A DNA stretch of 56,280 bases from Octopus bimaculoides. Lineage: Eukaryota. The translations under genes were made by a program, and so were the position numbers. The stretch is from positions 340,427 through 396,706 of the forward strand of contig NC_068991.1 in NCBI RefSeq assembly GCF_001194135.2, given 5' to 3'. Positions 2,960-53,987 of this stretch are shown here, one piece after another (the first letter of the stretch is position 1; every line of letters starts with the position of its first letter). The notes beneath the pieces are model-generated. The model did not search any database, was not told the origin of the DNA, and saw only the letters and a program-made list of their open reading frames with translations.

Positions 2960-3070
2960 GATGAAATCTCAACATACCACAGAGATCAACTGAATCAGAA
3001 ATCATTTTGGGTTCAACAGCAAATGAAAGATTAAATAATCCTGTATCCATGACAATGATGCAAATTATGT
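2960..3070 (-). pseudogene. Possible PLAT C-terminal remnant following the 3620-3867 exon
   Basis: IIVMDTGLFNLSFAVEPKMISDSVDLC loosely resembles V.D......F.V.RW.....D.D. A GTATGT donor-like site is present but I found no clear acceptor. Confidence 0.3.
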
Positions 3071-3619
3071 CTTCACAGATCAATTTCAAGATTTTGTATT
3101 ATTTGTTAAGAGATGTGTTTCAGGTAAAAACAACAATAATTCTATTCATTGCCATTCAATAAAATGTAATAAAACTATTATTTTCCAACTGGCACCAACA
3201 GCTTTGTTGACACTGATTATTACTGGACATTTAAAACAGGGACGGGCAGTGGCCACCACCACTGAATGATTTCCCAGGAGCTAATAATGTGCTTGATCAG
3301 GTTATCCCTATTTCAGTTTAGAATTAAAAAATATTAAAGACCAGCACCAAATATCAATTTCTCTTTTCTCTAGATTTTTAAATGTTGGTTGGCAGCAGAG
3401 AAATATCTACAAATGTGGAAAAAAAAAAAATGCTTTTTTCCCCCTCTCCGGAATTTTGTCTTTCTGGTCTTTTCTCTCTGCCCGTGTTTTACCTGTTGTC
3501 ATCAAACAGTAACCATTCAAAAGTAACATTGTGTCAATCCTTCTGCTGTCTGAGTGACTGTAACGGTCTTTCCTTCAAACTATAACAACAGGAAAAATAA
3601 CAAATAAATAAATAAGTAC

Positions 3620-3867
3620 CTTTTCTAAAGGATAACCAGAGAAAGTGCCAGAGTTCTCATGCCAAATTCTGATTTTGTAGAGAGTTCCAATGTCTGCTGT
3701 GGCTATTTCAAATTTGTAAGTTTGCCCTCCTTTGAAACCTGTCTTTCTGTTGGACAAAAGTATTTCATTTGACTTTCCTTTCAAACCATATACAACAACT
3801 GAAATAGTAGAGTCAGGCCTTGCTCTTGTGGTCTCACTGGTTGACACCCACAAAAACCAACGTTGTT
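3620..3867 (-). pseudogene. PLAT exon with open frame (N-terminal about 80% of a PLAT domain)
   Basis: TTATTTCAG|AA acceptor and AAG|GTACTT donor; 248 nt, phase 1 to phase 0. Reads QRWFLWVSTSETTRARPDSTISVVVYGLKGKSNEILLSNRKTGFKGGQTYKFEIATADIGTLYKIRIWHENSGTFSGYPLEK. The usual GW.L is GYPL. Confidence 0.9.
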
Positions 3868-4029
3868 CTGAAATAAAGTTTAGAAATTTACCAAGTTCTT
3901 ATCAAAATACATGTAAGATTGTATATTTTAGAGTTTTATACATAAGCCCCACACATACAAATATGGAAAAGTGAATGTTATGAGGGCAAGTCAGAAATTA
4001 TATGCACTCTGTAATTTATTAAAAAATAA

Positions 4030-4252
4030 AAACAGGGGTTGAACAATTACATCTTTTTTTCCTTTTTTGACACAGACTCCTTGCTTTTCGATGCTCTTCT
4101 TCCAGTGGTCCATAAACTCGCTTATCCCATTGGAGAAGAATGTTTTCAGCCGGTTACACAGGCGTTTATGCATCACTTCCTGCACTTCTTCCTCATAAAG
4201 GATGTTTGCATAATCCATGGAGATGGTAGTCAGAAGGGGCAACGTCTGGACT
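4030..4252 (-). mobile_element. Mariner transposase C-terminal fragment
   Basis: SPDVAPSDYHL...EEVQEVMHKRL...FFSNGI...HWKKSIEKQG. Confidence 0.8.
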
Positions 4253-4524
4253 GGTGCACCTGTGGACTTCCCTCTCTTCTCCAAGATGAAAATACAGCTC
4301 AAAGGTCTCCGTTTTAACACTGTTGTGGAGAGCACATTACAGAAGGTCCTTAAGTTGCTTATTGAAAAAGACTTCCAGACTGGATTTCAAAAGTGGCAGG
4401 AATGCTGGTATGTAACGCTATGCAAGGGGACTCTTTCAAAGGAGATGAGGTCAAAACTTAGGTAAAATAAGTTATTTTTCTTATTAAACCTGACTATCCA
4501 GCAAGTTTTTGACTCCACCTCATA
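4243..4524 (+). mobile_element. Second, different mariner C-terminal fragment with terminal repeat
   Basis: APVDFPLFSKMKIQLKGLRFN...LQKVLK...DFQTGFQKWQECW; ends in TTTTTGACTCCACCTCATA (TIR-like). Confidence 0.8.
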
Positions 4525-4639
4525 CGTGATGTTGAGGTTTTCATCTGAAACTGAGACACTTGGCCACTGACAACATTGCACAACATCTCTCTCTCTCTCT
4601 CTCTCTCAGTATATATATATATATATATATATATGGAAA

Positions 4640-4858
4640 TGTGCTGTGCGTGAGAAGACCCGGCAAGCCAAGTAAGATCGTTGCCAGTGCCCCTGGACTG
4701 GTTCTTGTGCGGGTGGCACATGAGATGCACCATTTTGAGCGTGGCCGTTGCCAGTACCGCCTGACTGGCTCCTGTAGGATTTTCGAGCGAGATCGTTGCC
4801 AGTGCCCCTGGACTGGCTTGTGCGGGTGGCACATAAAAGACACCATTTCGAGCGTGGC
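4640..4858 (+). mobile_element. RTE-type 3' UTR/SINE tail with an internal direct repeat of about 70 bp
   Basis: GGAAATGTGCTGTGCGTGAGAAGACCCGGCAAGCCAAG matches the end of the 22.9 kb RTE. GATCGTTGCCAGTGCCCCTGGACTGG...GAGCGTGGCC occurs twice; the second copy runs into an N gap. Confidence 0.75.
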
Positions 4859-4972
4859 CNNNNNNNNNNNNNNNNNNNNNNNNNNNNNNNNNNNNNNNNN
4901 NNNNNNNNNNNNNNNNNNNNNNNNNNNNNNNNNNNNNNNNNNNNNNNNNNNNNNNNNNNNNNNGATGATGAT

Positions 4973-5143
4973 GATGTATGTATGTATGTATGTATGTATG
5001 TATGTATGTATGTATGTATGTATGTATGTATGTATGTATGTATGTATGTATGTATGTATGTATGTATGTATGTATGTATTTATGTATGTATGTATGTATG
5101 TATGTATGTATGTATGTATGTATGTATGTATGTATGTATGTAT
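4973..5143. repeat. (TATG)n microsatellite next to an N gap
   Basis: About 170 bp of near-perfect TATG. Confidence 0.97.
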
Positions 5144-6084
5144 ATGAGCCTATACCAGGAGCAGACAAATCATGCGTGTCTGTATGTATGTATAGATAGA
5201 CAGATGGATGGATTGATAGCTAAATAGCTTTATTGAAAACAGATGTCTTTTTATTGTTGGCAATTGTTGTTAGAATAAAGGACAACTCTTCCTACACACA
5301 CACACACACACACACTGAAGTAGGAGATTTATCTTATTTACTCAATACTGTTGTTATTCTGTGCCAAAGAAGAAATGCTGGGTGAGGAATATGAGAAGTG
5401 TAAGAGTGTAAATAATGGTTAAAAGTGCAATGAAAGTGAGAAAAAGAAGTTGAAAAGGTGAGAAAGAGAGTGTAGATGTGTGTGATTAGGGGCAAGTGTG
5501 CCAAAGTGTGGAGGTGGTGGTGGTTGAGTGCGAAAATGAAACAGTATGAGATAGAGAACAACACACACACACACACACACACACAGAGGGAGATTGGTGA
5601 TAAATGTATGTAAATTAAACGAAAAGTTGAAAAATATTTGTAAAAGAGTTAATGGTATAAAAAATTCTTGGAGTGTGTTACTGGGTGGGGTAGCGAGATT
5701 AGGAGGCTCCTAAAAACAGTACCTTTTGGCCTTCAAGTCATGCACACACACGCAAACAAACACACACACACACACACAGCAAAACATAATAAAAAAATAA
5801 CAAAAGTAATAGAGATATTTGTAGTCAGAATCCTCAGTCAGATGCTGAAGGAATATGGAAAGAATCGAAGACATTATGCTATCGTCCTTCTTTAAATACA
5901 AGAGAAACATCCACAAGAAATTGACAAGCAAAGGAAGAGAAAAAAGGAGATAAAAAAAGGGAGGCATCAGGGATTGGTTTATATGATTCACACACACACA
6001 CACACACATCCATATATATATGTGTGTGTGAGTGCCCAGTATTCCTGGGTTAGGGTTAGATAGTGGTGGGGTGGAGTTCTCAGT

Positions 6085-6330
6085 CACCTCCTCCTCAGGG
6101 TCCCTATCAGAAGCAATTGTCATTAGATTTTCTGGCTGGATTCCCAAGCACGACCAACTGAGATGATGGATATTATCCAACCATCTCATTTTTGGTCAAC
6201 CCTTAGGTCTCCTGCCTGAAGGCTTAGCTTGAAGAATCCATCGTGAGATTCTTTCCTGCATCATTCTAATTCCATGTCCATAGTATTGGGACATGTGACC
6301 TCTCAAAGCAGACAAGTAGCAGCTCCACTG
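6085..6330 (-). mobile_element. RTE-clade LINE C-terminal fragment
   Basis: YYGHGIRMMQERISRWILQAKPSGRRPKG*PKMRWLDNIHHLSWSCLGIQPENL..IASDR. Confidence 0.75.
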
Positions 6331-7111
6331 CATATATTTCAATCTCCAATCTGTGCCCCTCCTCTCATACATTAAGCCATCATCCCCTACTACACAGTTG
6401 ACCCCATTTTGCTTGGGGTTTGTAGTCTTGCAAGCTGCATGGCAATGTGAAATAGGGGTGAGGCATGGAAAAAGCACCAAGGACACTGTAAAATGGTTGG
6501 CATCGGGAAGGGTGTCTGTCTGTAGAAACTGTGACAGAGTAAACATCAGAGCATGATGCAGTCCCAGGAGCCATCAGATCAGGTCAAACTGCCCAGTCGA
6601 TGCCAGCAGAGAACGGGGACATTAAATGACTTTTCTTCATCATTATCATCATCATTGAATGTCCCCTTTTCATTCTGACATGGGGCAGTATAGTTGAGCA
6701 AGGAATTGTCAAGTTGCAGAGCTGCTTCAAGCTTCTATGTCATCTTTGGTGTGGCCCCTACAGCTGGATGCCCTTTCTCACACCAAACATTTAACAGAGT
6801 GTACTGGGTGCTTTTTTTCATGTCATGTGAGGTGGCCATGTAACTAAAAAAAGAGAAGAAAAGAAAGGAAAAACTTCCACTACTGACAGAAAGTGGGGGA
6901 GGTGAAGGTAGGGGGCGGCGGCTATATTTCAGGTGCTGAAAGGCATGAAAGGTATGATAGAGTGACAAGTACAGGTGTCTTGCTAGAGGTCTACATGGCT
7001 GAAGAAGTCATGAGAAAGATAAGGATGGGATGTTACAACAAACTCTCAAGGAATCTATGTGTGTTTATGCGTATAACTTATACACATATACATACATATA
7101 CATACATTTAT

Positions 7112-7357
7112 CATTTATTCCGCAGTCTTCAAAATCATTTGGACGGAAAAAATATGAATTCTGTAGACGAGGTCAGAACAGTAGTGGAGGAGTATTTTTC
7201 ATCATGAATTTTGGAAGAGGGGCCTTGCAAGTCTACCAAACGGATGGAAGAACATTGTAGAAAACGAAGGTGGGTATATTTTAGATTAAAAAAGATCTTT
7301 GTTTAGGTTAATTTTGAAAAATAAAGGAAGTATAAAAAAACATTATTTATGGGATGA
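7112..7357 (+). mobile_element. Mariner 3' fragment, near-identical to 18785-19039
   Basis: HLFRSLQNHLDGKNMNSVDEVRTVVEEYFSS plus TIR remnant; 181/182 identity with 18785-18966 by eye. Confidence 0.9.
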
Positions 7358-7364
7358 CCTTGTG

Positions 7365-7409
<45 letters not shown>

Positions 7410-7478
7410 AATGACCTTTATATTTTTGAAGAAATTAATTAGACTGTAAAGATGAAATAAATTAGATGAAAAACTTAC

Positions 7479-7873
7479 TGTTTTCAAGTTTTTTTTCCAC
7501 TGTGTTTCCTTCATCTAAAATCTCTTTGATCAAACCATCTCTTTCATCAGCTGCTAACCACATGTTGCATGGGGAAACTTGCTCAAGACTTGTTAAAGTC
7601 TAATGAATAACCACTTGGTCCAAAGTCAATCTAGAGATAAGCTGGAATTATCATGACTAATTATAATTCTATCAACAAGGGCCACTTTCCTCAAAAGCGA
7701 TATATTGAATAATGTCTGTTTTTATCTCGTTTAAAGTTACTGTTTTTGATCCAGATCTTGCTGTTGCTTGTTTGTATTTTAGTCATTGTCAAAGATAAAC
7801 AGAAATACATTGAAACTAGTGCCAACATGTCTTCTGTTTGTCTTGTAGTGACAACTGGTGGTGAGTGGACAAT
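7479..7873 (-). pseudogene. Complete PLAT exon disrupted by frameshifts and stops
   Basis: CTTCCAG| acceptor and ACA|GTAAGT donor. Pieces across frames: HYKTNRRHVGTSFNVFLFIFDND*, NFKRDK, EVALVDRIIISHDNSSLSLD*, DQVVIH*, PCNMWLAADERDGLIKEILDEGNTVEKKLEN. Ends in phase 1, compatible with the 3867 exon. Confidence 0.9.
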
Positions 7874-7962
7874 CTGGAAGAATAAAAGACATTACTGAGA
7901 AATGGAATCAATAGTTTGGCTTATGAAAGAGCATTTGTTGCGAAGAAAGGAGATTGACAAAC

Positions 7963-8140
7963 CTGGAACTTGGCTTTGTTGTTTTCAATAAACAAGACTT
8001 AGAAAAACTATTCCAGTTCATAAAAGAACAACAAGAATAACAAGCTAATTGTTCGAAAACTATTCCTTTGAGGTCTGAATAACTAAGGTTGGTCGAAACA
8101 CATTGGTAGGAAGGCTGGAGGCAAGAGATTCGTGATGGTT
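7963..8140 (-). pseudogene. Exon remnant, probably the C-terminal half of a PLAT
   Basis: Long pyrimidine tract then TTTCCTTCAG|; CAG|GTTTGT donor; 89-nt intron to the next PLAT exon. The open frame reads EPSRISCLQ...DLKGIVFEQLACYSCCSFMNW, loosely like EP.KI.I....L..I....Y.C.F..W. Its exit phase does not match the next exon. Confidence 0.5.
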
Positions 8141-8467
8141 CTGAAGGAAAGAATAACTTGGAAGAAGGATAATGAAATAAATGCATCTCAGTGAAAAGAA
8201 CAGAGTCTAAAGATAAGTATTCATTATTATGACGAGATATAAAAAGGCAGACATAGTTTCATCTTGTCCCCTTTGTTGCCCCACTTCCCTCCCTTCCCTA
8301 TTTCACCTTTCTCAGCCCTACTCACTATGAATAAATGAAAAGAAGTTAGTCTGTTACATTCATTTTCAGCTATTTTTGACAAACACTGCTTGCTCTCCAC
8401 CACCCATCTTATTGTTTACATAACAAAGCACACCCGGCTAACACAAATATGCTATAGACTCTATTAA

Positions 8468-8501
<34 letters not shown>

Positions 8502-8643
8502 CAGTATTAGTTTGGATGGCTTTGTCTTAGTGTTCGTATAAACACATAAATACACATGCCCCAGCAAGTCTGCACAAAGCTTTTGAATGAAAGAACACAC
8601 ACCTATATGTATGCACCCCCCTGCCATGCACAACCATACACGT

Positions 8644-8699
<56 letters not shown>

Positions 8700-8999
8700 T
8701 TACAGTAACCTGGAAATTTCTCAAATCATTCCTTATAAGTTTCCCTTTTCTGATCTTCCAGAAACATAAGACATGGAGTAAGAGTTAGGGAATTGTTCAC
8801 TTTAGAATAGAATAAAACTCTACAATACATATTGAGCACTCTTTTTATACCTTCTAGTTTTTATAATTACTTGCAGCATAATGTAATAAACACATGTGAG
8901 TATGCAACTGTATTTATTTCAAACACATCAAATTAGAAGCAGTATTATTATTAATTATCAAAATTTTCCATGAAGATTGTGTTCCTATTTATTTACAGT

Positions 9000-9269
9000 T
9001 TAGAAGTAAAGATGATGAATAAAAAAGATGACAAAAAAGATAACGAATAAAATGTGCAATTATCCAGAGTTTCACACTGACTTAACTAAACCTATTGATG
9101 ACAGGAGGTGGAATTTTGTTGAGAGAATTTGCTGCCCTCAAAGACAACAATTATCACAACTGAAGGGTTATTACATTCAAAGATGAAATTCCTGCAGAAT
9201 TGGTCAAGCCAAGTTTATAGCTAGAAGAATACACCACAATGAGATCAAACTTAAAACCATGGGGAATAT
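9000..9269 (-). pseudogene. Possible PLAT N-terminal exon remnant
   Basis: GGCTGTAG| acceptor, then DIPHGFKFDLIVVYSSS..LGLTNSA and in another frame SVVIIVVFEGSK; contains stops. Entry phase matches the 9682 donor. The 3' boundary is approximate. Confidence 0.3.
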
Positions 9270-9681
9270 CTACAGCCAATATTAGATGCAAAAAACCAAA
9301 AACATTTGTACAATGTTTTTCATGAACCAACACTTAAAGGGTCCAATGTATTAATGTAGCAAAACTGACGACACACAAGTTATATAAAGTAGAGAGAAGA
9401 GAGAGAGAAACTGCACACAGAACGTAGAGAGTGTTTATATAATTTCAGAACAATGTATGAGGGAAAGAGTGGTGTAAGAGGAGAGGAGATGGGGTGACAT
9501 CAAGGTTTATAAACAGACACCAGATGGCGCCGTAAATGACTATTTGTTATCAATTTAGGATGTTTTTCGTTGGATTAATAGATGAAAAAAATAGAAACAG
9601 TAAAATCTGTAAAATACATTATCAGTGATGCACAGTGCATACATGCACACAACAACAACAACAACAACACACACATATTAC

Positions 9682-9811
9682 CTTCATCTTTTCTGTCCCC
9701 TTTCAACGGCATAAGAGGTATTGTCCACTCAATGCTGACCAATTCCCTTTCACCATTGACCTTTATCCATGGCAAACACAGCAACTTAATTAAATCTTAT
9801 ATTACATCCAG
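9682..9811 (-). pseudogene. PLAT C-terminal exon remnant
   Basis: CCATTTTAG| acceptor and GAAG|GTAATA donor. IRFN*VAVFAMDK then frameshift to NGERELVSIE, equivalent to F.C..WLA.DK.DG.I.RELV. Confidence 0.6.
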
Positions 9812-12479
9812 CTAAAATGGTGTCATGTACGTCTTTTGTGACAAAATAAAACCCTAAGCATATGTGACCAATGGTAGACTTGATCTATCTTAACCAGAAT
9901 CAGTTTTTTGTTATAGAAAAATCCTTTCAGCTGAGAAAGTTTACATTTATGGAATTAGCTGACCATTATTTATTTTGAGAAAGTGGACAAAAGTGGACAT
10001 AGAGCAATGTCCAGTGTCTAATTCTCCTGATAATGTGCATGCATATATATGCACATACACACAAGGACACAAATGAAAACACACATCCACACATAACAGA
10101 CACACAAACCCATATACATAGAGACAATCAAACATGCACACACAAACACATGCATATATGTGTATACACATGCACACACATGTGCACAAGCAAACAAGCA
10201 AAAAGAATGCAGCTTCAGTACTGGATAGAGTCAACAACTATTGAAGAGGTTGCAAGAAGCAACGAAAATTTTAGAAAAAATAAGTAAATGGGTGGAAATA
10301 GCCAATAAAGCACCTTCCCTACTAACTCTAAGAAAGCAACCTGCCTAGGAAATTGGTTATTTAACCTTGTTGTGGAAAGGAATCATGGGTTTTCTATCTG
10401 TGACCACAAAAAGAGATTAATTTAACTAGTTTCAGTATTTATTACAGCCTCATCAGAAATTGTAAACTTATTTTCTGCCCATAGTATGAATATTATTTGT
10501 AATTGAGAGAAACTCACACAGAACTAAGTTGCCCTGCAAAATGTCTTTAAAAATTAATTGAAATACTGCACTAGGGTTTAAAAATTTTTTTTTTTTAAAC
10601 AAAATTTGAAACTTTTAGAATGCGAGACCAGTGTGTGACCACATTGAGGATTTCACAAAAACTCAGGCTCACAAGACTTAACTTACACTTTAAATTATTT
10701 GACAGAAATCAGTAGTTTGATGTATTAGGAATTCATTGATCAAAGATGCTCCAACTATGACCCTCATGTCTTTTACTCAGACACACAGTGTATCTAGAAG
10801 CTCATTATCTTTGCTTCGTTGCTGTTGTTTAACCTCAAGTCAGTCCAATTCCAGTAGGCCCATGACCAAAGTTGCTCCAACTGTGGCCATCCAATCTGTT
10901 ATTCAGATACAATGTATCTATAACCAGATCATCTAATGTGTCCTTCGTTTTGTAAGATGACAAGGTGTGATTTGATGGAAATTTGACTGCTATTCCCAGC
11001 AAGCTGTATAAAGTATATCTGGTATATATTTCATTGTTATTTACCTCCAATCAGTCATCATTCAGCAGAACTATGATATTCCAACCATGACCATCTTGCA
11101 GAGATTTCGTTATCAACTCACTAGAACATTGAATATTCAGAACTCAGTAAGAATTTCACATCTAAACTATTGGTGAGATGAGATTCTGTTGTGTCTAATT
11201 CCAGTTTTGTCATTGATTGTACAAAAAAATTCACTTTCTATATTAATATCTCATTCCTCACCCTCTTCCTCAATCTGTCTCTCTCTGTCTCTCCTTTCTC
11301 ATCTACATATAAAATCAGGCCCCTATTATGCCAAAAGAATGATTGAACAATCAGTGGTAGATACTTAAATAAAGATTAATTAAAAATTAAGTGATTATAA
11401 GAATAGAGATGGCATGTTCAATGCGAACTTGACACACAAAGACATCAACATATGGAAAGAAAATTGCTTCCATCTTTATTAGTCTAAAAATACTCCCCAT
11501 GAAGGTGGTCTACTGGCTAGAATAACTTGGCATAGGAAGTGAGTGAAGTTTCTTAAATTAATGACTTTGAAAAAGAGAAAAAAACCTGGCTTGAGAAGAG
11601 GAGGGAAAACAATTCGTGTAAAGGTTCTATTTTCTTCCCCAGTCTTGAGTCAACATTTACAAGCAGTGTCTAGCTAGTTGCTGTTGTTATTATTACTATT
11701 ATTATTATTATTATTATTACTATGAAAATTACTATTCAAAACAGAACACTGCCTCAAATAAGCACACAATACGACCGAGCTGAGTCTGCAAAGATTTCCT
11801 CCTTGAAGTATGTACAGCTTGTTATCAACACATGAAATCATAACAGTCATTTATTCGATGTTTGTTTTGTATTTCTCATGGAAGTATGACATAAAATATA
11901 TAAACACTTCTCTAATCAACTAGATTGGTAGGGCATCAGTGATGGCTTCAGTCTCATAGGGGTCTATAGAAAGGGTTACGGCTCTGATTTAATTCATTAA
12001 ATGTCCTGTCTCCCAAACTCAATTGTTTTTTTTTTTTGGCTCCTTAGTGTGTCTTGTCTTTCAGACAACACTGAACATGTCTGACAATTCTTTCACTCCA
12101 CAATACTTACCTCTGGAATTCATTCCTTGGCCATAGTTTTCCTCCTTACATTTGTGAAAAAAATGGCCAAACTAATCATTAACCACATCAAAGTTACCAG
12201 TGTGGGTGCAGTCTTGAGGCTTACCTGCTCCTGTCAACTCATGCCAGCATGGAAAACCAGCCATTAAATGATGATGATGATAGTGCAATTTAAAACTTAA
12301 ATTGCATGACAAATAACCAATATTTAAAACTTCATGTGTATTCCCTTTTGTGTTGTTACGAAAACGTACATAGGATGGTGTAACTAAATATCTTATACAC
12401 AATTTCTCACGTTTTATTTTATTTTGTGTGTGTGCGTGTGTGTGTGTGTGTGTGTATACAATTCTATACAGAAGCATAT

Positions 12480-12720
12480 TTTCAGGTTTCTTTAGGGAAT
12501 AAATGAGGTCATCAGATCAATCTCCAAACTCAAGTCCCTCAAGCAACCAAAGAATGGTGGTGCTAGGACACTACCTCTTTCTCACCATCACTTAACTAGT
12601 CACATGTCAATGTTAAACTTTGGTGCCTTTTGTCCAAAGTAGATTTTTTTCTCTGCAAGTACCTCACTCAAGATATCATTTATCCGTCTAAGTCCCTCAA
12701 CTCTCCTATTTCACAATACT
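12480..12720 (-). mobile_element. Degenerate LINE RT fragment
   Basis: RGSVLAPPFFGCLRDLSLEI resembles QGSVLSPLLF...LS.EF. Confidence 0.4.
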
Positions 12721-14034: not shown

Positions 14035-14082
<48 letters not shown>

Positions 14083-14299
14083 CGTGCGTGCGTGTGTATG
14101 TATGTGTGTGTGGTGCCAGATAGAATCCAAGGAAGCACTTAATGGTGAGTTTCAGTAAAATAAGATAAATACCACAAGAAGTGAAAACCATTTTCTCTTC
14201 ATGAAATATTTATCTTATTTTATGAATTATACGCTGGGTAATTTAACTAATTACTGTTATTGCTGTTTCATTTCATTATTATTATTATTATTATTATTC

Positions 14300-14420
14300 A
14301 AATACCGCTGAGGTTGACTTTGCCTTTCATCCTTTCAGGGTCAATAAAATAAGTACCAGTTGCATGCTGGGATCGATGTAATTGACTCATCCTCCCACAA
14401 GCTGCCCTTGTGGCAAAAAT
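14300..14420 (+). mobile_element. SINE core fragment; related copies at about 415-535(-), 19600-19730(-), 26750-26830(+), 45630-45760(+)
   Basis: Shared GACTTTGCCTTTCATCCTTTC.GGGTC.ATAAAATAAGTACCAG core. Confidence 0.8.
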
Positions 14421-42050: not shown

Positions 42051-42092
<42 letters not shown>

Positions 42093-42199: not shown

Positions 42200-42522
42200 A
42201 CTTTATAGAAGAAACCCCTCACAAATTTTAATGTCTTTCAAATCTACATATATACAATTTATTGGTCTTCTAGATTTCATCTGATAACTTAGATTCTTCA
42301 GGTTCAACTCCAGGTTTATCTGTTGTGATAGTTTCAGTTTTCATGTCAGTTCCAAGTTATTTACACATGACCTCAACCCCAAAGGTCAAGTGTCAGGCCC
42401 CAGGAGGTCTTGTGACTTCTATGTATCAAATGGAAGCAGCATCTTCAAAGATATATAAACATATATCATTTTTCATATGATTTAGGTTGGTTAGTTGGGT
42501 GCCATTGCTTATACAGATATTT
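42200..42522 (-). pseudogene. Possible whole-PLAT remnant
   Basis: TATTTCAG| acceptor, then EISV*, NDICLYIFED, TFGVEVMCK*LG...ITTDKPG, TNKLYICRFER in PLAT order. Confidence 0.35.
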
Positions 42523-43766: not shown

Positions 43767-43815
<49 letters not shown>

Positions 43816-46530: not shown

Positions 46531-46565
<35 letters not shown>

Positions 46566-46999
46566 TACACACACACACAAGCATAGCCAAATCGAACTTC
46601 CTCTGAAGGATCTCTGGAGTAATGTAACATTGACAGGGTGCGTAACTTGAAAACGAGGGAGTCTCTCCAGCTCAAGCCCTTACTTCTCCACATTGAGAGG
46701 TCATAGCTCCACTATTACAGACATAGAATAAGAATTTCATGGAAAAGTATTGTCAGATGTATTCTTGAAGCTGTGCTAAGCACCAGGAGACTGAGTGGTA
46801 GGAATGAAATGGTTGGACAAGGTCCGTAATCTCAATTGGTCACACTAGGGAATCCAACTAGAAAATCTATTCACAGTTGCTCCTGATGGGACCCTACGAA
46901 GGAGGTACCTGTGGGCTCCCCCCCACCCACTGCTCTCCCAGGAGTAGTGGGTGCAGAAGGTGGAGATACATGTGCATACATACACACATAAATATATAC

Positions 47000-47200
47000 A
47001 TAGATACACGTATATATGCAGAGGACGTGTGAAAGCTTAAAATAAACGAGGCCAACATGCTCTGCTGAATGTGCAATATCAGAGTGCATATTTGACAAAG
47101 TGTTGAAAGATGAGGACAGCTGCATAAGCAAGTGTCGATCCTTAGACATGGAAGAGGAAGTGGTGCAAAATGACTTCACTGAGGTAATAACAAAGAACTG
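47000..47200 (+). mobile_element. RTE 3' fragment
   Basis: NEANMLC*MCNIRV and DEDSCISKCRSL motifs. Confidence 0.6.
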
Positions 47201-47917
47201 AGACAATTGGCAATTTGCTACACTTGAAGAAATCTGACCAGCTAAGTAAAACCGAGACCATAAAAGTGTGTCCTTTATGCTTGCATCCACACTCCCCCCC
47301 CCNNNNNNNNNNNNNNNNNNNNNCCCCGCCCCCACTTCTGTACACAATATGATCCCTGACAAATCTCTCCTACATCCCAACTTGCTCCGCTTCCCCCTAC
47401 TGTATTCTTCTCCCCTCTATCTGCCTCTCTCCCTCATGAAACCACCTGTATACAATATCCCTGTCAAATCTCTTCCCCACAACATCTCCTTCCAATACAC
47501 CCTCCTCCTACCCATCCCCACTCACTACATTCTCAACCCCTCCATCATCCACTCTCCTTTCACAATCTCATGAACTTTACCACCTACCCACCCACCTACT
47601 TATCCTCCTCAATCTCCAGTCCACTTCACTATATATAATGCCCTTGTGTGTACACCATGTCACATCTTCACCTGATCTATCTCTCTCTCCCTCACCTGTT
47701 GTAGATATGAGTTTCATTTACTGCAAAACACCTATTTCTGTCCCTCAGTTAAGGAGCCTTGTCACTTGGTGACCTCACTAGTGTTGGTGCCACCTAAAAA
47801 ACACCAAATATCCTCTATAAAGTGGTTGGTGTAATGAAGGGTATTTGGTGTTTTTAGTTAGTGTAATGAAGGGCACCCAGCTATAGAAAGTATACCATAT
47901 GTACAGTAGAGCTTTTG

Positions 47918-47979
<62 letters not shown>

Positions 47980-48159
47980 TACACATTTACATATCTATAT
48001 GTATATACATATGATGGCTGCCCCCTCATTATCGAGTATGGCCATGTATATACATACATATATACTCTCATAGTCTTATATATACATACCACTACACACA
48101 TATACATACATGTATACACACACACACACACAAAATTACATAGATATCAAGAATACGAC

Positions 48160-48594
48160 TCATCAGTCTCCATTTTTCTGTCTGATAAAATCCTAAGAAG
48201 CCTACATGACATGATTGAGATCAGTTTCTTCATCCTGGCATAGTTCACTAGTTTTCAAGTATGTTTTGATGTCAGCAGGGGGTGTATGGCAAGTGGGGGT
48301 TGACTAAAGTTGCGTCTAGTCTTGTTCCTTATGTTTACATAGTCTCACAGTGAAGACAATTTTAATAATTCACTGAAACACACTGAATCAGATATTTTGT
48401 TCAAAAATGTATTCTGTTGCCCACTAAGTAAGAACCACCCCAACCCCCTCAATGATCTCTGGAGCAAGCCAATAAGTGGATGAGGGACCAATCTCAACAA
48501 TGATAGGACAATGGGCCATATGGAATTTACCACTTCTGGTTAACGAAACATTTACCAGTTGCAGTGTTGTAACTACATACAACAGTCACAGGTT
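48160..48594 (-). pseudogene. Whole-PLAT exon remnant
   Basis: TTATAG| acceptor. EPVTVVCSYNTATGK...IPYG, then LLSGQQNTFLNKISDSVCFSELLKL, then SCRLLRILSDRKMETD; several stops and frameshifts. Confidence 0.5.
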
Positions 48595-48819
48595 CTATAA
48601 TGCAGAGTACAAAATGGACAGTGTTCCATTTATATCCATCATGTATAACATGTTGTTGTGTAGCTATATATATGAAATATACTGCATCATTTATGGACAG
48701 TGTTCCAGCTTTATACATCAGTTACCAACTATATAACACAATATATCATATATACACACACACAGTATTACATCAGTCATATATACACACACACAAAAAG
48801 AAGTACATTCAACTAAAGG

Positions 48820-49102
48820 GCTAAGAAGGAATCACTGGTTCATAGATTTGCTCTGTCATCTCACTGTCATTTCTATCCTCTACTACAATGGTCTATGCTC
48901 CACTAAATTTATTACCCAATACATGAATGATTATTCATCAGATACATTCAGATCTCCAAGTCCCATCACTTCATGAAACACAATATGATTCCTTCCCAGA
49001 ATTACAATCCTCAGGGACTTCCTCATTGCCCACTTTTTTCCAGCAGTAGACATCAACACCTAAGCCTTGTGACACTGTTAATTACCAGCATGAAAGGAGA
49101 GC
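48820..49102 (-). pseudogene. PLAT exon remnant
   Basis: CTAACCTTTTTTAG| acceptor. SPFMLVINSV..GVDVY, GRNHIVFHEVMGLGDL, WSID(fs)IVVEDR...IYE. Confidence 0.55.
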
Positions 49103-49185
49103 CTAAAAAAGGTTAGTGTGACTCCTTCTCTTACAAATTAAGAATATCCCAGATAGAGATTTATACTGTAAACTTATTTTCTTAC

Positions 49186-49329
49186 ATCAGTCAGTTTACA
49201 ATCTTGAGCTTGTAGTAAAAAATGTTATGATTACTGGACAACATCAAAATAGATCAAAGTATTCTCTCTTGGTGAAATAATTGGAGTTCACTGACTTAGT
49301 TTCATTCACATTCCATCCCTCTTTATCTC
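49186..49329 (-). pseudogene. PLAT C-terminal exon remnant
   Basis: CCTAACAG| acceptor and GAT|GTAAGA donor; 83-nt intron to the next remnant. GDKEGWNVNETKSVNSNYFTKREYFDLF* matches GW.V..V.V...T..EY.F. Confidence 0.6.
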
Positions 49330-50705
49330 CTGTTAGGCACACCTTTCAAACTACACACCAGTACCACAATATTTTTAATGTGCATAACATTTAGGTAACA
49401 TACATACATACATACATGCTGCATGTCTAGATATGCAATTATATGCATGAGAATACATACATAAAACAAACAAATCTGCACATACATACGTACACACAAA
49501 TAAAAAAAACCCTGTTGTTGATGTTGAAATTCCAGTGAAGAAGCCTTGAATCTAAGTTGGAAACCGGTTCTTTCTCTATTGGCAAAAAATCTTGAAATAA
49601 CTGAATAATGACATACATAAATTGTATGGGGGTATTTTAGTCCAACAGAGCATAAATCAGAGGAACTGAAATAATTTAAACATTAGAAAACCACACTGTG
49701 GGTTAAATAACAATGTAAACATAATCTTTCTGTATAAGTGGGGTGCAATAACCCAAGGGAGTCTCCTGATGGGCCATTTTACAATTTGTTGACTGCTCCT
49801 CAGAAAAGACATACCTGTCTTCTTCTAATTTACATTGTGTTCTACAATAATAGAATTCAATTGATGAAGAATTGTCAAAAGCACAAATATATTGGCACCG
49901 AAGATGATGATGGCAGTGGTGGTGGTGGTGATGCTGATGATGATGATGTGGCAGATAAAGAGGAAAATATTCAGATAATGATATCGGGGCTTGTGATAAC
50001 AATGATGATAATTGTGATTGTGGGGATACGACAATGTTGGTGGCAATGGTGGCTATGGTGATGATGATTGTTAAGTTGATGGTGATGATGAGAGTAGTGA
50101 TAAATTTTGCTGTTTTGGAGCTGAATTTAGAAGAAATATTTGGAAGAGGAATTATTGCCGAATATATCTGTCTTATGTAATATCAGAGAGTTTTAAATAT
50201 GAGATTATGTGTGTGTATGTGCTTGTGTATGTGCATGCACATGTGTGGGAGTGTGTAAATGTGGAGGGTGGAAAGCAGTACACATGTAGATATGTTGGTG
50301 GCGTTGGTGAAGGGCTTGATGGTAATGGGGACGTTGGTGGTGGCATACACATAGTTACTTGTATACATACATGCACATATGGTCTATATACACATGCATC
50401 CACCCATATGTATATACACACACACATCCATACACAAACATACATACACTCATACCTACACATACCCCCACACACAAAGTGAAAGGATACCCACATGTAG
50501 AAGCTGTAAATAAGATGTGAGAGAGAGAGAGAGAGAGAGAGAGCTGAAAATGAGGGAGGGGGCACGTGAATAAATGAAAGAGTAAAAGAGTAAAAGAGGG
50601 TAGAGGAGTGAGAAGGAGGAGGATGTTGAAGTGGAAGGCTTACATCAACCAATGAGAAATCAGTCTGGAGACTGATGAAGGAAAATGTAAATGCTGGTCC
50701 TTCTG

Positions 50706-50744
<39 letters not shown>

Positions 50745-51124
50745 CTCTCTCTCTCACTGTTTAGTTAAGGTTATCATGCATAAAGACCTCACATAATAAA
50801 AAGGAGGGGAAACAAAATAAACAACAAACAAGAAGCAAAATAAAAAAAAATAGATCTTACAACTGAACTGGAAACTGTAAAACAGTAGAGAAGAGGAGAG
50901 TGAGAGGAGAGTGATGGTGTGAGTGTTGTGGTTGCAGGAGTGAGGGGTGGATGACAAGTGTTTCTCTTTCTGTTTTTTTTTTTGGAAAGCTAAAGTGTTA
51001 AAGTTAAAGAGCCGCTGGTTGTACAAGTGGAAGGAAGGACATTACTGTTGAGGAGGAGACCTGCCTTCTTAGAACAACACACACTTTGGTAATTTACTTC
51101 AAGAGCAGCTGGCAGCAGCAGTGG

Positions 51125-51160
51125 TATATAGAGAGACACAGTTCTACTTCTACAGCAGTT
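51125..51160 (+). promoter_or_regulatory. Candidate TATA plus Inr core promoter for the plus-strand gene
   Basis: TATATAGAG at 51125 with an Inr-like GCAGTT whose A (51157) is 32 nt after the first T. GA-repeat tracts lie upstream (about 50520 and 50710-50755). A possible donor (GTAAG at 51406) and the acceptor at 51667 would give a non-coding first exon. Such motifs arise by chance in AT-rich DNA. Confidence 0.3.
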
Positions 51161-51827
51161 TGCTTCACTCATTACAACAGTGGAGAAAAAAAAAAGAGAG
51201 AAAAACAGATTCTAAAGGAGAAAAAATGTTTATTTAACAGAAGCAAAATATGTTATTAAAAAAAATTGGAAAAAAAGGAAAAAGTTAATTTCATTCTGGG
51301 AGAAACTAAGGAAAAAGATTTTTGTGTGTGAATATTTGGTGTTTTATAGAAACTATTCTGTGGATATATAACATGGTTTAATGAAAGAACCAAACAGTTG
51401 GACATGTAAGATTCTTCATCTGTTTATTCTCAATGTTTTTTCTATTGTTTTAAAGTCAGCTCATACAAATTAATAATTATTAATTATTCGTTGGTGAATT
51501 TTTTGAAAACATTTCTGCAAATTCTTTTCACAAAATCTCATTGCTTTCATTGACTGACTTTAAATAAAGCAAAACAAAAACGAAACCCCAAAAAATAGGC
51601 ACCTCCTTCCTTCCCCAACCTCATAAATAATAATTATTCTCTGTAACGAAGATGTCTATTTCTGCAGGAGACCATACTGATCTAACAGGTGCTAGTCACA
51701 CCTAACAGAGTCAGTAACCTTCAGAAGAGAATCAAGAAAAAAGAAAACAAACGACTGAGAACGGGAAACAAAAACTGGTAACACTTTGTGAAATCTAAGA
51801 TTTAATAATATTTGCTCATCATCCATC

Positions 51828-53625
51828 ATGCATTTGTCAATGTTATTGAGTTTACTATTCTTGCTATCAAATGGGATTGTATCTGTTATGGTGGCAGCAG
51901 CTTCAGAAGAATGTGTAATCAGTATGGTGATTCCAAGGAACAAAATTAAGAGTTCTTGTAGCGATGTTGAAAGCTTGTCAAAAGTAGTAAATAAAAACAG
52001 AGAGGACATGTATGGGTTCGATAAAGAAATGAAGTCATTGAAATTCATGTTAGTGACTGAGATGCAAGGCAGCACGGAAAAAAGGATGAGCCTAAATGCT
52101 CGAATAATTCGTCTTGAAAAGATTATTAACCAGCTGATTGGAAATCCTGATAGCAGTAGGACCGGAGAAGAGCATGGTCACCGTAAAACAGATACAACTT
52201 CTCATCCCTATTACTATGGGAGATCATCAATAAACAATCACCAAGTGAAAGATGAAGCTTTAGCGGATGTGCCACAGTTAGAAACTATGGTTGAGAAATA
52301 CACTTTAAATGCGTTTCGCAAAGTCAACAACACCATATCTCAAGAGGTTGATAAACGCTTTAAAGCATATGAAAATAATTTCAATGAAGACCTGCAGAGA
52401 AGTTTAGATGACACCATCCCTAGAGAAGAAATTGTCCAAAAACTTGATGATGGAGTCAGAGCTGAACAACCAATGTCAAGTGCTCGTATCATGTCGACAG
52501 TCCTTTCTGCAGAACTGAAAGAGTTGAGGAAAAATATTCGAGATCTGACAAGGAAATATCAGGAAATCCATAAATATTATTATTCTCTTGAAGAAAGAAT
52601 GAGGATTGAAAGTAACAGCATTCAAGGACAACTTAATGCAACGAAGGGAGTAACCCTCCAAGTGAAGAGAAAAGTTCAAACAATTGAAAGAACTGCAAAC
52701 AAAACCATAGCTGACGTAAAGATGTTGAATAAAAAAATCCCAAACCTCGAAGACTGGCGTTATGAGATCAATAACTCTGTACACAGGGCGAACATTTCAG
52801 CAATCAAGAACATTCATAGAATGTCGAATCAAATTAATTCAAGTTTGTATGAATACATAGATGAGATTATGGGTCCTTTGGATTCCAAGATCCAAGAAAT
52901 TGTAATCGGTTCTCAGAAGCTTGAGGAACTCATTTACGACTTGAAACATGATCTTAATGATACACAAGAAAAACATGCTGGATCTCTGGACCAGGTACAG
53001 TCCAAGATCAGGCAGATTGATGACGGAATGAAATTGCATTTCCTGAATATTTCACAAATTCTATTCACAGCAATCAGTGCTCTCAAAGGCACAGACAACC
53101 AAACCATGGAGAAATTACAGAAATACAACGAAAGCATTAATATCATGAAAGGCAATCTGCTGGGTAAAATACAACATGTAAACTTCACAATGCAACTCTT
53201 AAAGAGTCATACAAAGAACCAAAGTGAAGAGATGCAGAAACAGGCCAATGTTATAAGACATTTGAATGAAATTCTCAATTCAACGTCTTTGAGAATGAAT
53301 GCCATGAAGAAAGAACTGCTACAGTTTCGGACTGAGGTGCTTGTTAATTCTGGGAAATGGGCACCCTATAATTTCTCATTCCATAATATCACAAGTGATT
53401 GTTATGGCACACGCTACATAAAGAAAATTCCTTACCACGTCGGACGGTATGTTGGTGTGATACTTTGTGGTCAGCCTGAAAGATATAAAATTCTTCTCAG
53501 TAACAGAATGTTTTCAGGGTATTTGGATATAGCAGACAATTTGGGATCAGGAGATGACCACTGTGAATTCGTAGGATCCAGTAGAAGAACATTTAATTGC
53601 AAAGGCTCAATCAAAACAAATGAAG
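51828..53625 (+). CDS. Large coding exon of a secreted coiled-coil glycoprotein with an ABI3BP(TARSH)/FNDC1-like C-terminal domain; 3' exon(s) not in window
   Basis: Uninterrupted frame of 599 codons plus 1 nt. In-frame TGA upstream at 51789; ATG has A at -3. Hydrophobic N-terminus MHLSMLLSLLFLLSNGIVSVMVAAASEE. Middle is heptad-rich and helical. The end, W..F....SDCYG.RYIK..Y..GRYVGVILC...RYKILLS......DI.D..G.GDDHCEFV....EG, matches the ABI3BP/FNDC1 C-terminal motif as I recall it (C.G.QYVK..Y..FVGV.LCN..RYKIYLS......NIGD..GHGEDHCQFV). Donor GAAG|GTTTGT at 53625/53626 (phase 1) is followed by T-rich intron-like sequence. Candidate acceptor TTTCTGCAG|GAG at 51667/51668. Confidence 0.9.
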
Positions 53626-53753
53626 GTTTGTACATTCTTTTCTTTTTCTACTTTAATTTGATGTTAAAACTGAAGAAAAAAAAAAAAGAAAGAATAATCT
53701 AGAATTTCTACATTATCACCTGCCCCCAACCCACACACACACACACACCTTAC

Positions 53754-53987
53754 TTCTCAATGCTACATTTCAGTATTTCATACTTTGTGGCATTGTTTTA
53801 TTCTATACTTCTTCCTCCCCAAAAACAATTTCTGTTGATTAATTTTGAAATCAGAAATCTTAATTTTCAGACTAAAGTTCCAATAGTCTTCACAAACCGT
53901 TTCTATTTGACCAAGATTGATTCTTATTTTATAAACAGTCGTATAACACCATAGCTGCTATTGGTTGTTAAGTACTCCTGACTACAA
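53754..53987 (-). pseudogene. PLAT remnant inside the intron of the plus-strand gene
   Basis: TCTCCTCTTTAAG| acceptor and GAA|GTAAGG donor. TVYKIRINLGQIETVCEDYWNFSLKIKISDFKINQQKLF matches G..YKIRI.......W.L..V...D......F; a frameshift lies upstream. Confidence 0.6.

What the first reader, a model, noticed from the sequence alone, without database searches (positions are those of the whole stretch)
2960..53987. Hidden 50-kb LOXHD1-like pseudogene with introns still in place
Seen: about 15-20 minus-strand PLAT-like segments with splice signals, most carrying several stops or frameshifts, and almost invisible in the ORF track. Established: LOXHD1 is a tandem-PLAT protein needed for hair-cell stereocilia mechanotransduction in mammals (DFNB77). 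Inference: the gene decayed in place and is not a processed copy. If no intact paralogue exists, this is a unitary loss in an animal group that relies on statocyst and epidermal hair cells. If one exists, this is a dead duplicate.
Basis: partly seen in the sequence, partly recalled or inferred. Interest (0 to 1): 0.8.

Follow-up and report, generated by a model that had tools for sequence, protein, structure and literature searches.

The report
Decayed LOXHD1 gene remnant in octopus
This octopus window holds three leftover exons of the hearing-related gene LOXHD1, two of them broken by stops and frameshifts, at the gene's ancestral position around a still-intact nested gene; so the gene probably died in place, but the relic is far smaller than the 15-20 pieces first reported.

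Summary
The core idea holds; the described extent does not. Frameshift-tolerant profile scans find three LOXHD1-derived exons on the minus strand, not 15-20:
- A, 25061→24934: two frameshifts.
- B, 7873→7479: four TAA, one TAG and one frameshift.
- C, 3867→3620: open frame, but only 19 of 32 near-invariant residues kept.

They score 35.9, 86.8 and 107.5 bits against a null maximum of about 21. The same kind of scan, run with the generic PLAT profile, gives 44 exon hits on a live limpet LOXHD1 locus.

The three exons match consecutive stretches of mollusc LOXHD1 (Pecten residues ~530-787). They keep canonical splice sites, compatible phases and the limpet exon sizes (128/395/248 nt against 133/390/248 nt).

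The span from 25 kb to about 52 kb is not a string of dead exons. It is the ancestral host intron. It carries an intact antisense TARSH_C gene (51828-53702, +), which is also nested in the LOXHD1 gene of Patella (in the matching intron) and of Lymnaea.

This marks the orthologous locus and favours a unitary, unprocessed pseudogene. About 70% of the gene lies outside the window, and an intact copy elsewhere could not be ruled out. No assembly gap touches an exon.

The parts
24934..25061 (-). Relic exon A: the C-terminal third of LOXHD1 PLAT5 (counting repeats on the Patella gene). It is 128 nt, with acceptor ...ttgtattgcAG and donor GTGAGT. It reads VISEDLKN / MYEFPCIHWFSKT / KNDGLISRDLFLISGPKKPNT across three frames, which implies two 1-nt frameshifts and stops in each single frame.
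   Evidence: Sequence. The frameshift-corrected peptide hits LOXHD1 profile columns 520-558 at 27.5 bits and Pecten residues 530-568 at 46% identity. The frameshift-tolerant scan gives 35.9 bits against a null of 20.8 or less. The Patella equivalent exon is 133 nt, phase 0 to 1.
7479..7873 (-). Relic exon B: the whole of PLAT6 in one exon. It is 395 nt (ancestrally a multiple of 3, phase 1 to 1), with acceptor ttcttccAG and donor GTAAGT. It carries four TAA and one TAG in frame and one frameshift near 7645-7625.
   Evidence: tblastn to oyster LOXHD1 residues 635-681 gives E=1e-9, and to Physella 652-698 gives 45% identity. The frameshift-tolerant scan gives 86.8 bits over profile columns 576-692. 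Pfam PLAT is only 15.4 bits, below the cutoff. The Patella equivalent is a single 390-nt exon.
3620..3867 (-). Exon C: the N-terminal two thirds of PLAT7. It is 248 nt, phase 1 to 0, with acceptor tttatttcAG and donor GTACTT. The reading frame is open, but conserved residues are lost (AGTDA became ARPDS, GWHL became GYPL).
   Evidence: Pfam PLAT E=7e-11. Identity to Pecten residues 705-787 is 45.8%, E=6e-18. The frameshift-tolerant scan gives 107.5 bits. The exon length is identical to the 248-nt Patella exon. It keeps 19 of 32 near-invariant columns, against a mean of 94% in live orthologues.
3868..7478 (-). Intron between B and C, containing assembly gap 4860-4963, an (ATGT)42 array and a copy of the mariner tail at 7112-7204 (+). 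The donor and acceptor phases match (phase 1).
7874..24933 (-). Intron between A and B. It is 17.1 kb, has no gap, and is filled with microsatellites and transposon debris, including mariner-like transposase remnants at 18168-18880 (+) and a LINE-tail-like ORF at 22743-22979 (+).
   Evidence: No PLAT signal above noise.
25062..51827 (-). The 3' part of the ancestral host intron, which splits PLAT5 at PLAT profile position 88|89. No LOXHD1 exon is expected here and none is found.
   Evidence: In Patella the equivalent intron (L002 20430-50644) holds the antisense TARSH_C gene. Scans of this region stay at noise level.
51828..53702 (+). Intact 624-codon ORF: the large exon of a nested antisense gene encoding a coiled-coil protein with a TARSH_C domain. 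It is not part of the pseudogene but serves as its synteny marker.
   Evidence: Pfam PF21731 E=2.4e-26. Identity is 93% to an Octopus vulgaris protein and 76% to an Argonauta hians protein. A TARSH_C gene is nested antisense in LOXHD1 of Patella and Lymnaea.

Best explanation
The window comes from an octopod genome and covers the middle-5' part of the orthologous LOXHD1 locus, on the minus strand. The gene has decayed in place as an unprocessed pseudogene.

Shown:
- Three ancestral exons survive in the ancestral order, with ancestral boundaries and phases. They encode what were LOXHD1 residues ~511-775: the end of PLAT5, all of PLAT6 and the start of PLAT7.
- Exon A has two frameshifts. Exon B has five stop codons and one frameshift.
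- Exon C is still open but has lost about 40% of the residues that every live orthologue, from sponge to mammal, keeps.
- The introns have expanded (3.6 kb and 17.1 kb, against 0.6 kb and 6.9 kb in Patella, where a 21-nt micro-exon also lies in the second of these) and are full of microsatellites and transposon remnants.
- The rest of the claimed span (25-52 kb) is the ancestral host intron. Its antisense nested TARSH_C gene remains intact.

Inferred:
- Selection on LOXHD1 was relaxed in this lineage. The coding exons drifted, while the nested gene stayed under constraint and preserved the locus.
- The remaining ~70% of the gene (PLAT7 C-terminus onward, left of the window) and the first ~510 residues (right of the window) could not be examined.
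For: Identity of the sequence:
- The top matches of exon C among 1.84 billion representative proteins are 16-18-PLAT proteins named LOXHD1.
- Exon C best matches one specific repeat: Mustela PLAT4 at 61 bits against 35 for the next repeat, and urchin PLAT5 at 61 against 43.

Collinearity and adjacency:
- A maps to profile columns 520-558, B to 576-695 and C to 696-781.
- On mollusc proteins, the C-terminal part of B matches Physella 652-698 and C matches 703-783.

Gene architecture:
- All three exons have AG/GT splice signals.
- Phases run 0 to 1, 1 to 1 and 1 to 0, and the B|C junction is in frame.
- Exon sizes are 128/395/248 nt against 133/390/248 nt in Patella.

Lesions: coordinates.

Relaxed constraint:
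- Near-invariant columns kept are A 9/14, B 16/40 and C 19/32. Live orthologues keep a mean of 93-94%, with a minimum of 73-79%.
- Identity to molluscs is 27% for B and 40% for C, against 52-80% between live mollusc orthologues.

Orthologous locus: an antisense TARSH_C gene sits in the same LOXHD1 intron in Patella and is also nested in Lymnaea LOXHD1. It is absent from the crinoid locus.

Local assembly quality: the neighbouring 624-codon ORF is uninterrupted.

Annotation: no protein in the 5.8-billion-sequence database shares even three 5-mers with exon C, although Octopus vulgaris and Argonauta proteins are in it.
Against: - Only 3 of roughly 45 LOXHD1 exons fall in the window, so the state of the rest is unknown.
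- Exon C has no stop. If it had decayed at exon B's rate, the chance of no stop in 82 codons would be about 0.04. It may therefore have stayed in use longer, or may still be used.
- Exon B is phase-symmetric, and exon A together with its partner exon forms a symmetric unit. A transcript that skips them would stay in frame.
- No reads, transcripts or second octopus genome could be consulted.
- The absence of cephalopods from the protein lists is weak evidence, because those lists are truncated and pre-filtered by shared words.
Confidence: 0.8

Rival explanations
1. LOXHD1 is still alive here but shortened. PLAT5 and PLAT6 were dropped, their dead exons remain as intronic fossils that splicing skips, and exon C plus the off-window exons still encode a multi-PLAT protein, possibly from an internal promoter.
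For: Exon C has an open frame and good splice signals. Exon B is phase 1 to 1, so skipping it keeps the frame. Its open frame would be unlikely (p about 0.04) if it had decayed like exon B.
Against: Exon C keeps only 59% of near-invariant residues, which is below the worst live orthologue (74%), and is 40% identical to molluscs against 50-80% among live mollusc orthologues. No database protein contains an exon-C-like sequence. No PLAT7 C-terminal exon lies within the 3.6 kb downstream, whereas in Patella it follows after 0.5 kb.
Confidence: 0.12
2. The locus is dead, but the loss is not unitary: an intact LOXHD1 paralogue elsewhere in the genome carries the function.
For: Not excluded: no genome-wide search was possible. 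Fish carry two LOXHD1 copies (names).
Against: The relic sits at the ancestral locus, marked by the nested TARSH_C gene. That gene has a single Octopus vulgaris match. No cephalopod protein appears among 120 listed multi-PLAT homologues or among 30 named representative clusters, although many gastropods and bivalves do. This last point is weak.
Confidence: 0.12
3. The gene is intact and the lesions are assembly or sequencing errors.
For: The assembly has seven gaps and many microsatellites. Single-base frameshifts are a typical long-read error.
Against: Five of the eight lesions are substitution-type stop codons. Conserved residues are replaced throughout all three exons. The frameshifts are not in long homopolymers. 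The adjacent 1.9-kb ORF is error-free.
Confidence: 0.03
4. The segments belong to another PLAT family, such as a polycystin-1-like gene, or are chance similarity.
For: The best solved-structure match of exon C is the polycystin-1 PLAT domain, E=0.003.
Against: The Protein Data Bank search returned no LOXHD1 chain. Against the full protein libraries, the best matches are LOXHD1 repeats at up to 86 bits and 45% identity, with three consecutive exons matching consecutive LOXHD1 positions and LOXHD1 intron positions. No REJ, GPS or channel domains were seen.
Confidence: 0.01

Closest known systems
LOXHD1 orthologues of molluscs: Patella vulgata (P0265, 2538 aa), Pecten maximus (P0271), Lymnaea stagnalis (P0266), Crassostrea virginica (P0299)
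   Same: The relic has the same repeat identities (PLAT5 C-terminus, PLAT6, PLAT7 N-terminus), the same intron positions and phases, an identical 248-nt exon, and the same antisense nested TARSH_C gene (placed in the matching intron in Patella).
   Different: Those genes are open and about 2550 aa long. Here two of three exons are disabled, 36-60% of near-invariant residues are lost, and the introns are much longer: B-C 3.6 kb against 0.6 kb, and A-B 17.1 kb against 6.9 kb in Patella (which has an extra 21-nt micro-exon there).
Vertebrate LOXHD1 (DFNB77), which is needed to keep TMC1 mechanotransduction channels at stereocilia tips (PMC8051682, PMC11387651)
   Same: It belongs to the same orthologous family. 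Exon C best matches PLAT4 of the Mustela protein.
   Different: No function can be assigned here, because the sequence cannot encode the protein. The role of LOXHD1 in invertebrate ciliated mechanoreceptors is not established.
Unitary unprocessed pseudogenes, the class exemplified by GULO in primates (from general knowledge)
   Same: It sits at the orthologous position, retains its exon-intron structure, carries disabling substitutions and indels, and has functional orthologues in related taxa.
   Different: Unitary status, meaning no functional copy in the genome, is not shown here.
Polycystin-1 PLAT domain (PDB 6a70, 8z6f)
   Same: It shares the PLAT fold family and gives the best solved-structure sequence match.
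   Different: Polycystin-1 has a single PLAT domain embedded in a membrane protein. The relic's three exons match consecutive LOXHD1 repeats instead.
DCX-PLAT proteins, annotated 'oxygen-regulated protein 1' or 'LOXHD1-like', about 3300 aa (for example Physella P0006)
   Same: These are also tandem-PLAT proteins and are present in molluscs.
   Different: Exon C matches them less well (40.6 bits to the best P0006 repeat against 78-86 bits to true LOXHD1). No DCX domain was detected.

Membership tests
LOXHD1 (orthologous gene family) | PLAT/LH2 domain sequence | tested here: met
   Exon C hits Pfam PF01477 at E=7e-11. Exon B reaches only 15.4 bits in Pfam, below the cutoff, but 86.8 bits with the LOXHD1-specific frameshift-tolerant profile. 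Exon A scores 35.9 bits.
LOXHD1 (orthologous gene family) | Best matches are specific consecutive LOXHD1 repeats, collinear and adjacent | tested here: met
   A maps to profile columns 520-558, B to 576-695 and C to 696-781. The corresponding Pecten residues are 530-568 for A and 705-787 for C, with B in between.
LOXHD1 (orthologous gene family) | Conserved intron positions and phases | tested here: met
   Exon sizes are 128/395/248 nt against 133/390/248 nt in Patella, with phases 0 to 1, 1 to 1 and 1 to 0.
LOXHD1 (orthologous gene family) | Conserved genomic neighbourhood | tested here: met
   An antisense TARSH_C gene is nested in the same intron in Patella and is also nested in Lymnaea LOXHD1. 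It is absent from the crinoid Antedon.
LOXHD1 (orthologous gene family) | Tandem array of about 15-18 PLAT repeats in one open reading frame | tested here: not met
   Only 2.3 repeats lie in the window, and two of the three exons are disabled. The rest of the locus lies outside the window.
Unprocessed pseudogene | Disabling lesions in formerly coding exons | tested here: met
   Five stops and three frameshifts in exons A and B, with near-invariant residues lost in all three exons.
Unprocessed pseudogene | Introns and splice signals retained, not a retrocopy | tested here: met
   The exons are 17.1 kb and 3.6 kb apart and are flanked by AG and GT.
Unprocessed pseudogene | Lesions are real and not assembly errors; no functional transcript | not testable with these tools
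   No reads or RNA-seq were available. Indirect support: the stops are substitutions, and the neighbouring ORF is intact.
Unitary pseudogene (lineage-specific gene loss) | Lies at the position of the functional orthologue of related taxa | tested here: met
   Synteny with the nested TARSH_C gene.
Unitary pseudogene (lineage-specific gene loss) | No functional paralogue elsewhere in the genome | not testable with these tools
   No cephalopod genome could be searched. There is only weak negative evidence from protein lists.
Polycystin-1 / PKD1-like | A single PLAT domain between transmembrane segments, with REJ, GPS and channel domains | tested here: not met
   There are three consecutive PLAT-repeat exons. 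The best full-library matches are LOXHD1, and no other domains were found.

The most novel reading that the evidence does not exclude
LOXHD1 is a gene kept from sponges to mammals and is essential for vertebrate hair-cell mechanotransduction. On this reading it has been lost outright (unitary pseudogene, no intact copy) in octopods and perhaps in all coleoid cephalopods. Its locus would be held together only by the intact nested TARSH_C gene. Cephalopod statocyst and epidermal-line hair cells would then transduce without LOXHD1.
Probability: 0.5. Interest if true: 0.6.

Novelty: new member of a known kind. Interest (0 to 1): 0.45.

Why it matters
LOXHD1 couples the TMC1 channel complex to the site of force transmission in vertebrate stereocilia (PMC8051682, PMC11387651). 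It has recognisable orthologues in sponges, echinoderms, gastropods and bivalves.

A dated, lesion-mapped loss in cephalopods would show that this component is dispensable for one kind of animal hair cell. Cephalopods have elaborate hair-cell organs built on kinocilia rather than stereocilia. Which parts of the transduction machinery are shared across animal mechanoreceptors would then become a testable comparative question.

I found no paper in the searchable library that mentions LOXHD1 in cephalopods.

The locus also gives a clean example of a host gene dying while its nested antisense gene survives. That helps explain why the relic is still recognisable.

Tried and rejected
- Word-indexed protein search with exon C: no candidate at all.
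- jackhmmer from exon C against the window's own six-frame segments: finds nothing else, because the seed is too narrow.
- A crude motif filter on stop-free segments was useless.
- Exact-product look-ups failed for the window's 624-aa ORF, the O. vulgaris orthologue, and the Pecten, oyster, Physella and Mercenaria LOXHD1 proteins.
- The Argonauta TARSH_C locus (45 kb) holds no PLAT signal. It does not reach far enough upstream to cover the relic exons, so it is uninformative.
- MAFFT --add of the relic to the full-length alignment misplaced exon A and the first half of exon B by one repeat. I corrected this with a local alignment of the subregion and with profile and BLAST placement.

Candidate extra PLAT pieces rejected as noise:
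- 21574-21732 (-): lies on a (TG)n microsatellite.
- 2099-2212 (-).
- 22904-22972 (-): overlaps a LINE-tail ORF on the other strand.
- 15002-15046 (-).
- 30880-31014 (+): a 'GHDNTGVAAS...GWYCKW' motif.

All five score at or near the decoy maximum (at most 22.9 bits, the top one lying on a microsatellite) in the profile scans.

- A search for the PLAT7 C-terminal exon in 1-3619 found nothing.
- The polycystin-1 reading suggested by the PDB match was rejected.

Full report
**What the window is.** The window is 56,280 nt with 36.8% G+C. It has seven N gaps and abundant TG, TA and ATGT microsatellites, so it is animal DNA. The only long ORF is 51828-53702 (+), 624 codons. It encodes a coiled-coil protein with a TARSH_C domain (Pfam PF21731, E=2.4e-26). 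It is 93% identical to an Octopus vulgaris protein and 76% identical to an Argonauta hians protein. The source is therefore an octopod.

**Gaps, tested first.** None of the gaps (4860-4963, 31214-31283, 37660-37741, 46085-46094, 46431-46530, 47303-47323, 54507-54542) touches a PLAT-derived segment. Four of the seven abut microsatellites on both sides, two more abut one on a single side, and the gap at 47303 lies in a poly-C run. The interval 4964-31213 is gap-free. It contains relic exon A, the A-B intron and exon B. Gap 4860-4963 lies in the B-C intron. Exon B ends at LOXHD1 profile column 695 and exon C starts at column 696-697. The B donor and C acceptor are both phase 1 and join in frame (…GAA AAC A|AA CAA CGT…). 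In Patella the two equivalent exons are direct neighbours. Nothing coding can be hidden in that gap. The remaining gaps lie in an intron where no LOXHD1 exon is expected (see the synteny paragraph).

**Checking the observation.** The stop-free segment 3578-3898 (-) is a genuine PLAT domain (Pfam PF01477, E=7e-11, positions 3-84 of 117). An exhaustive HMMER search of 1.84 billion representative proteins returns 585 hits. The top ones are 16-18-PLAT proteins that their sources name LOXHD1, from amphioxus, sea urchin, mink and lamprey.

From these I built two profiles. One is a generic 135-column PLAT-repeat profile from about 1030 repeats. The other is a position-specific profile of LOXHD1 residues 1-1000 from 15 orthologues, sponge to mammal.

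Four independent scans agree on three PLAT-derived segments on the minus strand (one of them also flags a plus-strand bin that the profile scans put at noise level):
- hmmsearch on stop-free segments and on stop-masked frames.
- tblastn with 150 representative proteins, which finds two clusters at E≤1e-3.
- tblastn with 853 single PLAT units against the window and a reversed decoy. Bins at 3.6, 7.4-7.8 and 25.0 kb on the minus strand give 918, 528, 375 and 359 hits, against a decoy maximum of 155. One plus-strand bin at 30.8-31.0 kb gives 234 hits.
- My own frameshift-tolerant profile-to-DNA alignment. The generic profile gives 94.2, 52.7 and 28.4 bits against a decoy and opposite-strand maximum of 21.7. 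The LOXHD1 profile gives 107.5, 86.8 and 35.9 bits against a maximum of 20.8.

The next minus-strand hit (22.9 bits) lies on a (TG)55 array. As a positive control, the same scan with the generic profile on the live Patella vulgata LOXHD1 locus finds 44 exon hits of at least 22 bits. A 15-20-segment array would therefore have been seen.

**Anatomy of the three exons**.
- Exon A, 25061→24934, 128 nt. Acceptor …ctattctttgtattgcAG, donor GTGAGT. It reads VISEDLKN, then MYEFPCIHWFSKT, then KNDGLISRDLFLISGPKKPNT in three successive frames. That implies two single-base frameshifts, near 25041-25035 and 25006-24997, and every single frame contains stops. The length fits an ancestral phase 0 to 1 exon that lost two bases.
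- Exon B, 7873→7479, 395 nt. Acceptor ttcttccAG, donor GTAAGT. It is a whole PLAT domain in one exon. It has TAA at 7781-7779, 7739-7737, 7733-7731 and 7724-7722, TAG at 7602-7600, and one frameshift near 7645-7625. The length is one base short of a phase 1 to 1 exon.
- Exon C, 3867→3620, 248 nt. Acceptor tttatttcAG, donor GTACTT, phase 1 to 0. The frame is open.

**Which gene, and is it collinear?**
- Exon C best matches one particular repeat in each full-length LOXHD1: Mustela PLAT4 at 61 bits against 35 for the next-best repeat, and urchin PLAT5 at 61 against 43.
- Against true mollusc LOXHD1 proteins of about 2550 aa, exon C aligns to Pecten 705-787 (45.8% identity, E=6e-18), Physella 703-783 and Patella 696-778.
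- The C-terminal half of exon B aligns to the residues immediately before these: Physella 652-698 and oyster 635-681, E=1e-9.
- The frameshift-corrected exon A peptide aligns to profile columns 520-558. In 10 of 15 orthologues its best match is the C-terminal third of the repeat just upstream of exon B (Pecten 530-568, 46% identity).

The three pieces are therefore consecutive stretches of LOXHD1, about residues 530-787 on Pecten numbering (511-775 in Patella) (alignment).

**Conserved architecture and synteny.** The Patella LOXHD1 locus (L002) has the same three exons: 133 nt (phase 0 to 1), 390 nt (a whole PLAT, phase 1 to 1) and 248 nt (phase 1 to 0). The last is identical in length to exon C.

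Patella LOXHD1 also carries an antisense nested gene with a TARSH_C domain. It sits in the long intron that splits PLAT5 at profile position 88|89, which is the intron immediately 5' of the exon-A equivalent. Lymnaea stagnalis LOXHD1 has an antisense nested TARSH_C gene too. The crinoid Antedon does not.

In the window, the TARSH_C ORF lies 26.8 kb 5' of exon A, on the opposite strand and in the same relative orientation. This has three consequences:
- The relic sits at the orthologous LOXHD1 locus.
- Window 25062 to about 51800 is the 3' part of one ancestral host intron, which explains why no PLAT relic is found there.
- LOXHD1 residues 1 to ~510 would lie right of the window, and residues above ~775 would lie left of it.

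The window can be expected to hold only these three exons, and all three are present.

**Is it dead?** Exons A and B cannot be translated. Five of the eight lesions are substitution-type stops, and the adjacent 1.9-kb ORF in the same assembly is uninterrupted. Assembly error is therefore unlikely.

In a leave-one-out test, live orthologues keep on average 93-94% of near-invariant columns, with a minimum of 73-79%. The relic keeps 64% in A, 40% in B and 59% in C. Its identity to mollusc orthologues is 27% for B and 40% for C, where live molluscs share 52-80% with each other. Even the open exon C has replaced AGTDA with ARPDS and GWHL with GYPL.

No protein in the 5.8-billion-sequence database shares three 5-mers with exon C, although octopus proteomes are in that database. 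No exon for the rest of PLAT7 lies in the 3.6 kb downstream, whereas in Patella it follows after 0.5 kb.

I conclude, with about 0.8 confidence, that this is an unprocessed pseudogene relic.

**What remains open.**
- Exon C's open frame would have a probability of about 0.04 if it had decayed at exon B's rate. Exon B is also phase-symmetric. A shortened gene that skips the dead exons is therefore not excluded (about 0.12).
- I could not test whether an intact paralogue exists.
- The absence of any cephalopod among 120 listed multi-PLAT homologues and 30 named clusters is only weak evidence, even though many gastropods and bivalves appear. Those lists are truncated and pre-filtered.
- The Argonauta locus I could fetch does not extend to where the relic exons would be.

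**Comparison with what is known, and novelty.** The object is a member of a known kind: a lineage-specific, probably unitary, unprocessed pseudogene of a well-known gene. Vertebrate LOXHD1 is required to keep TMC1 channels at the stereocilia tip (PMC8051682, PMC11387651). I found no paper linking LOXHD1 to cephalopods.

If the loss is unitary and shared by cephalopods, it would interest people working on the evolution of mechanotransduction. On present evidence it is a well-supported partial relic with an open question attached. The conserved nesting of a TARSH_C gene inside molluscan LOXHD1, and its survival after the host gene's decay, is a small additional finding.

**Verdict.** The gene identity, the in-place decay and the retained introns are right, and synteny strengthens them. 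The size, the segment count and the completeness are wrong, and the intact antisense gene was overlooked. Interest is 0.45.

Noticed in passing
window 51828-53702 (+): An intact 624-codon ORF encodes a coiled-coil protein with a TARSH_C domain (matching positions 1-77 of 127, so at least one more exon lies downstream). It is 93% identical to an Octopus vulgaris protein. It is nested antisense in the LOXHD1 host intron, and LOXHD1 carries a nested antisense TARSH_C gene in Patella and Lymnaea too, but not in the crinoid Antedon. The nested gene has outlived its host gene.
   Followed up: yes
window 18168-18880 (+) and 7112-7204 (+): Mariner-like transposase remnants. One has an HTH-bearing N-terminal ORF and a C-terminal ORF with the DNAQPH…SPDITPSDYHLF motif. 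The identical 31-aa tail peptide (HLFRSLQNHLDGKNMNSVDEVRTVVEEYFSS) occurs twice, once in each pseudogene intron. The family assignment rests on my own knowledge; Pfam gave only weak HTH hits.
   Followed up: partly
window 22743-22979 (+): A 78-aa ORF resembles the C-terminal tail of a LINE/RTE-type reverse transcriptase (…GRGRPRKTWDEVV…DRDLW…). Its opposite strand produced a spurious 'FPC' PLAT-like hit.
   Followed up: no
window 54900-55491 (-): Two overlapping ORFs of 170 and 80 aa look like a Tc1/mariner-type DDE transposase fragment (…IFIQDWAAAHVS…). They gave no Pfam hit.
   Followed up: partly
window 25302-25472; L001 28854-28977, 31942-32115, 36208-36373, 40344-40494: A ~170-nt element 240 nt upstream of relic exon A has four copies, at 68-73% identity, in the Argonauta TARSH_C locus. 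It is probably a SINE or other interspersed repeat shared among octopods.
   Followed up: no
window 30880-31014 (+): A plus-strand stretch reads …ERVELGEDILVLSC*GHDNTGVAAS…*SGWYCKW and resembles the PLAT 'GHDNxG…GW' core. Its profile score (15-21 bits) is at the top of the null range, so I treat it as chance. It could be a tiny inverted PLAT fragment.
   Followed up: partly
window 6-140: A 44-nt unit is repeated 3.1 times in tandem at 98% identity, at the very left edge of the window.
   Followed up: no
L002 (Patella) between 50777 and 57697: Patella LOXHD1 has an extra 21-nt micro-exon encoding VGDDDDD between the exon-A and exon-B equivalents. Other orthologues and the octopus relic lack it.
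   Followed up: partly
protein lists: Animals have two distinct tandem-PLAT families that annotation pipelines both call 'LOXHD1-like'. One is true LOXHD1 (about 2200-2600 aa, PLAT only). The other is a set of ~2800-3800-aa DCX-plus-PLAT proteins, often named 'oxygen-regulated protein 1'. No cephalopod member of either family appeared in the lists.
   Followed up: partly
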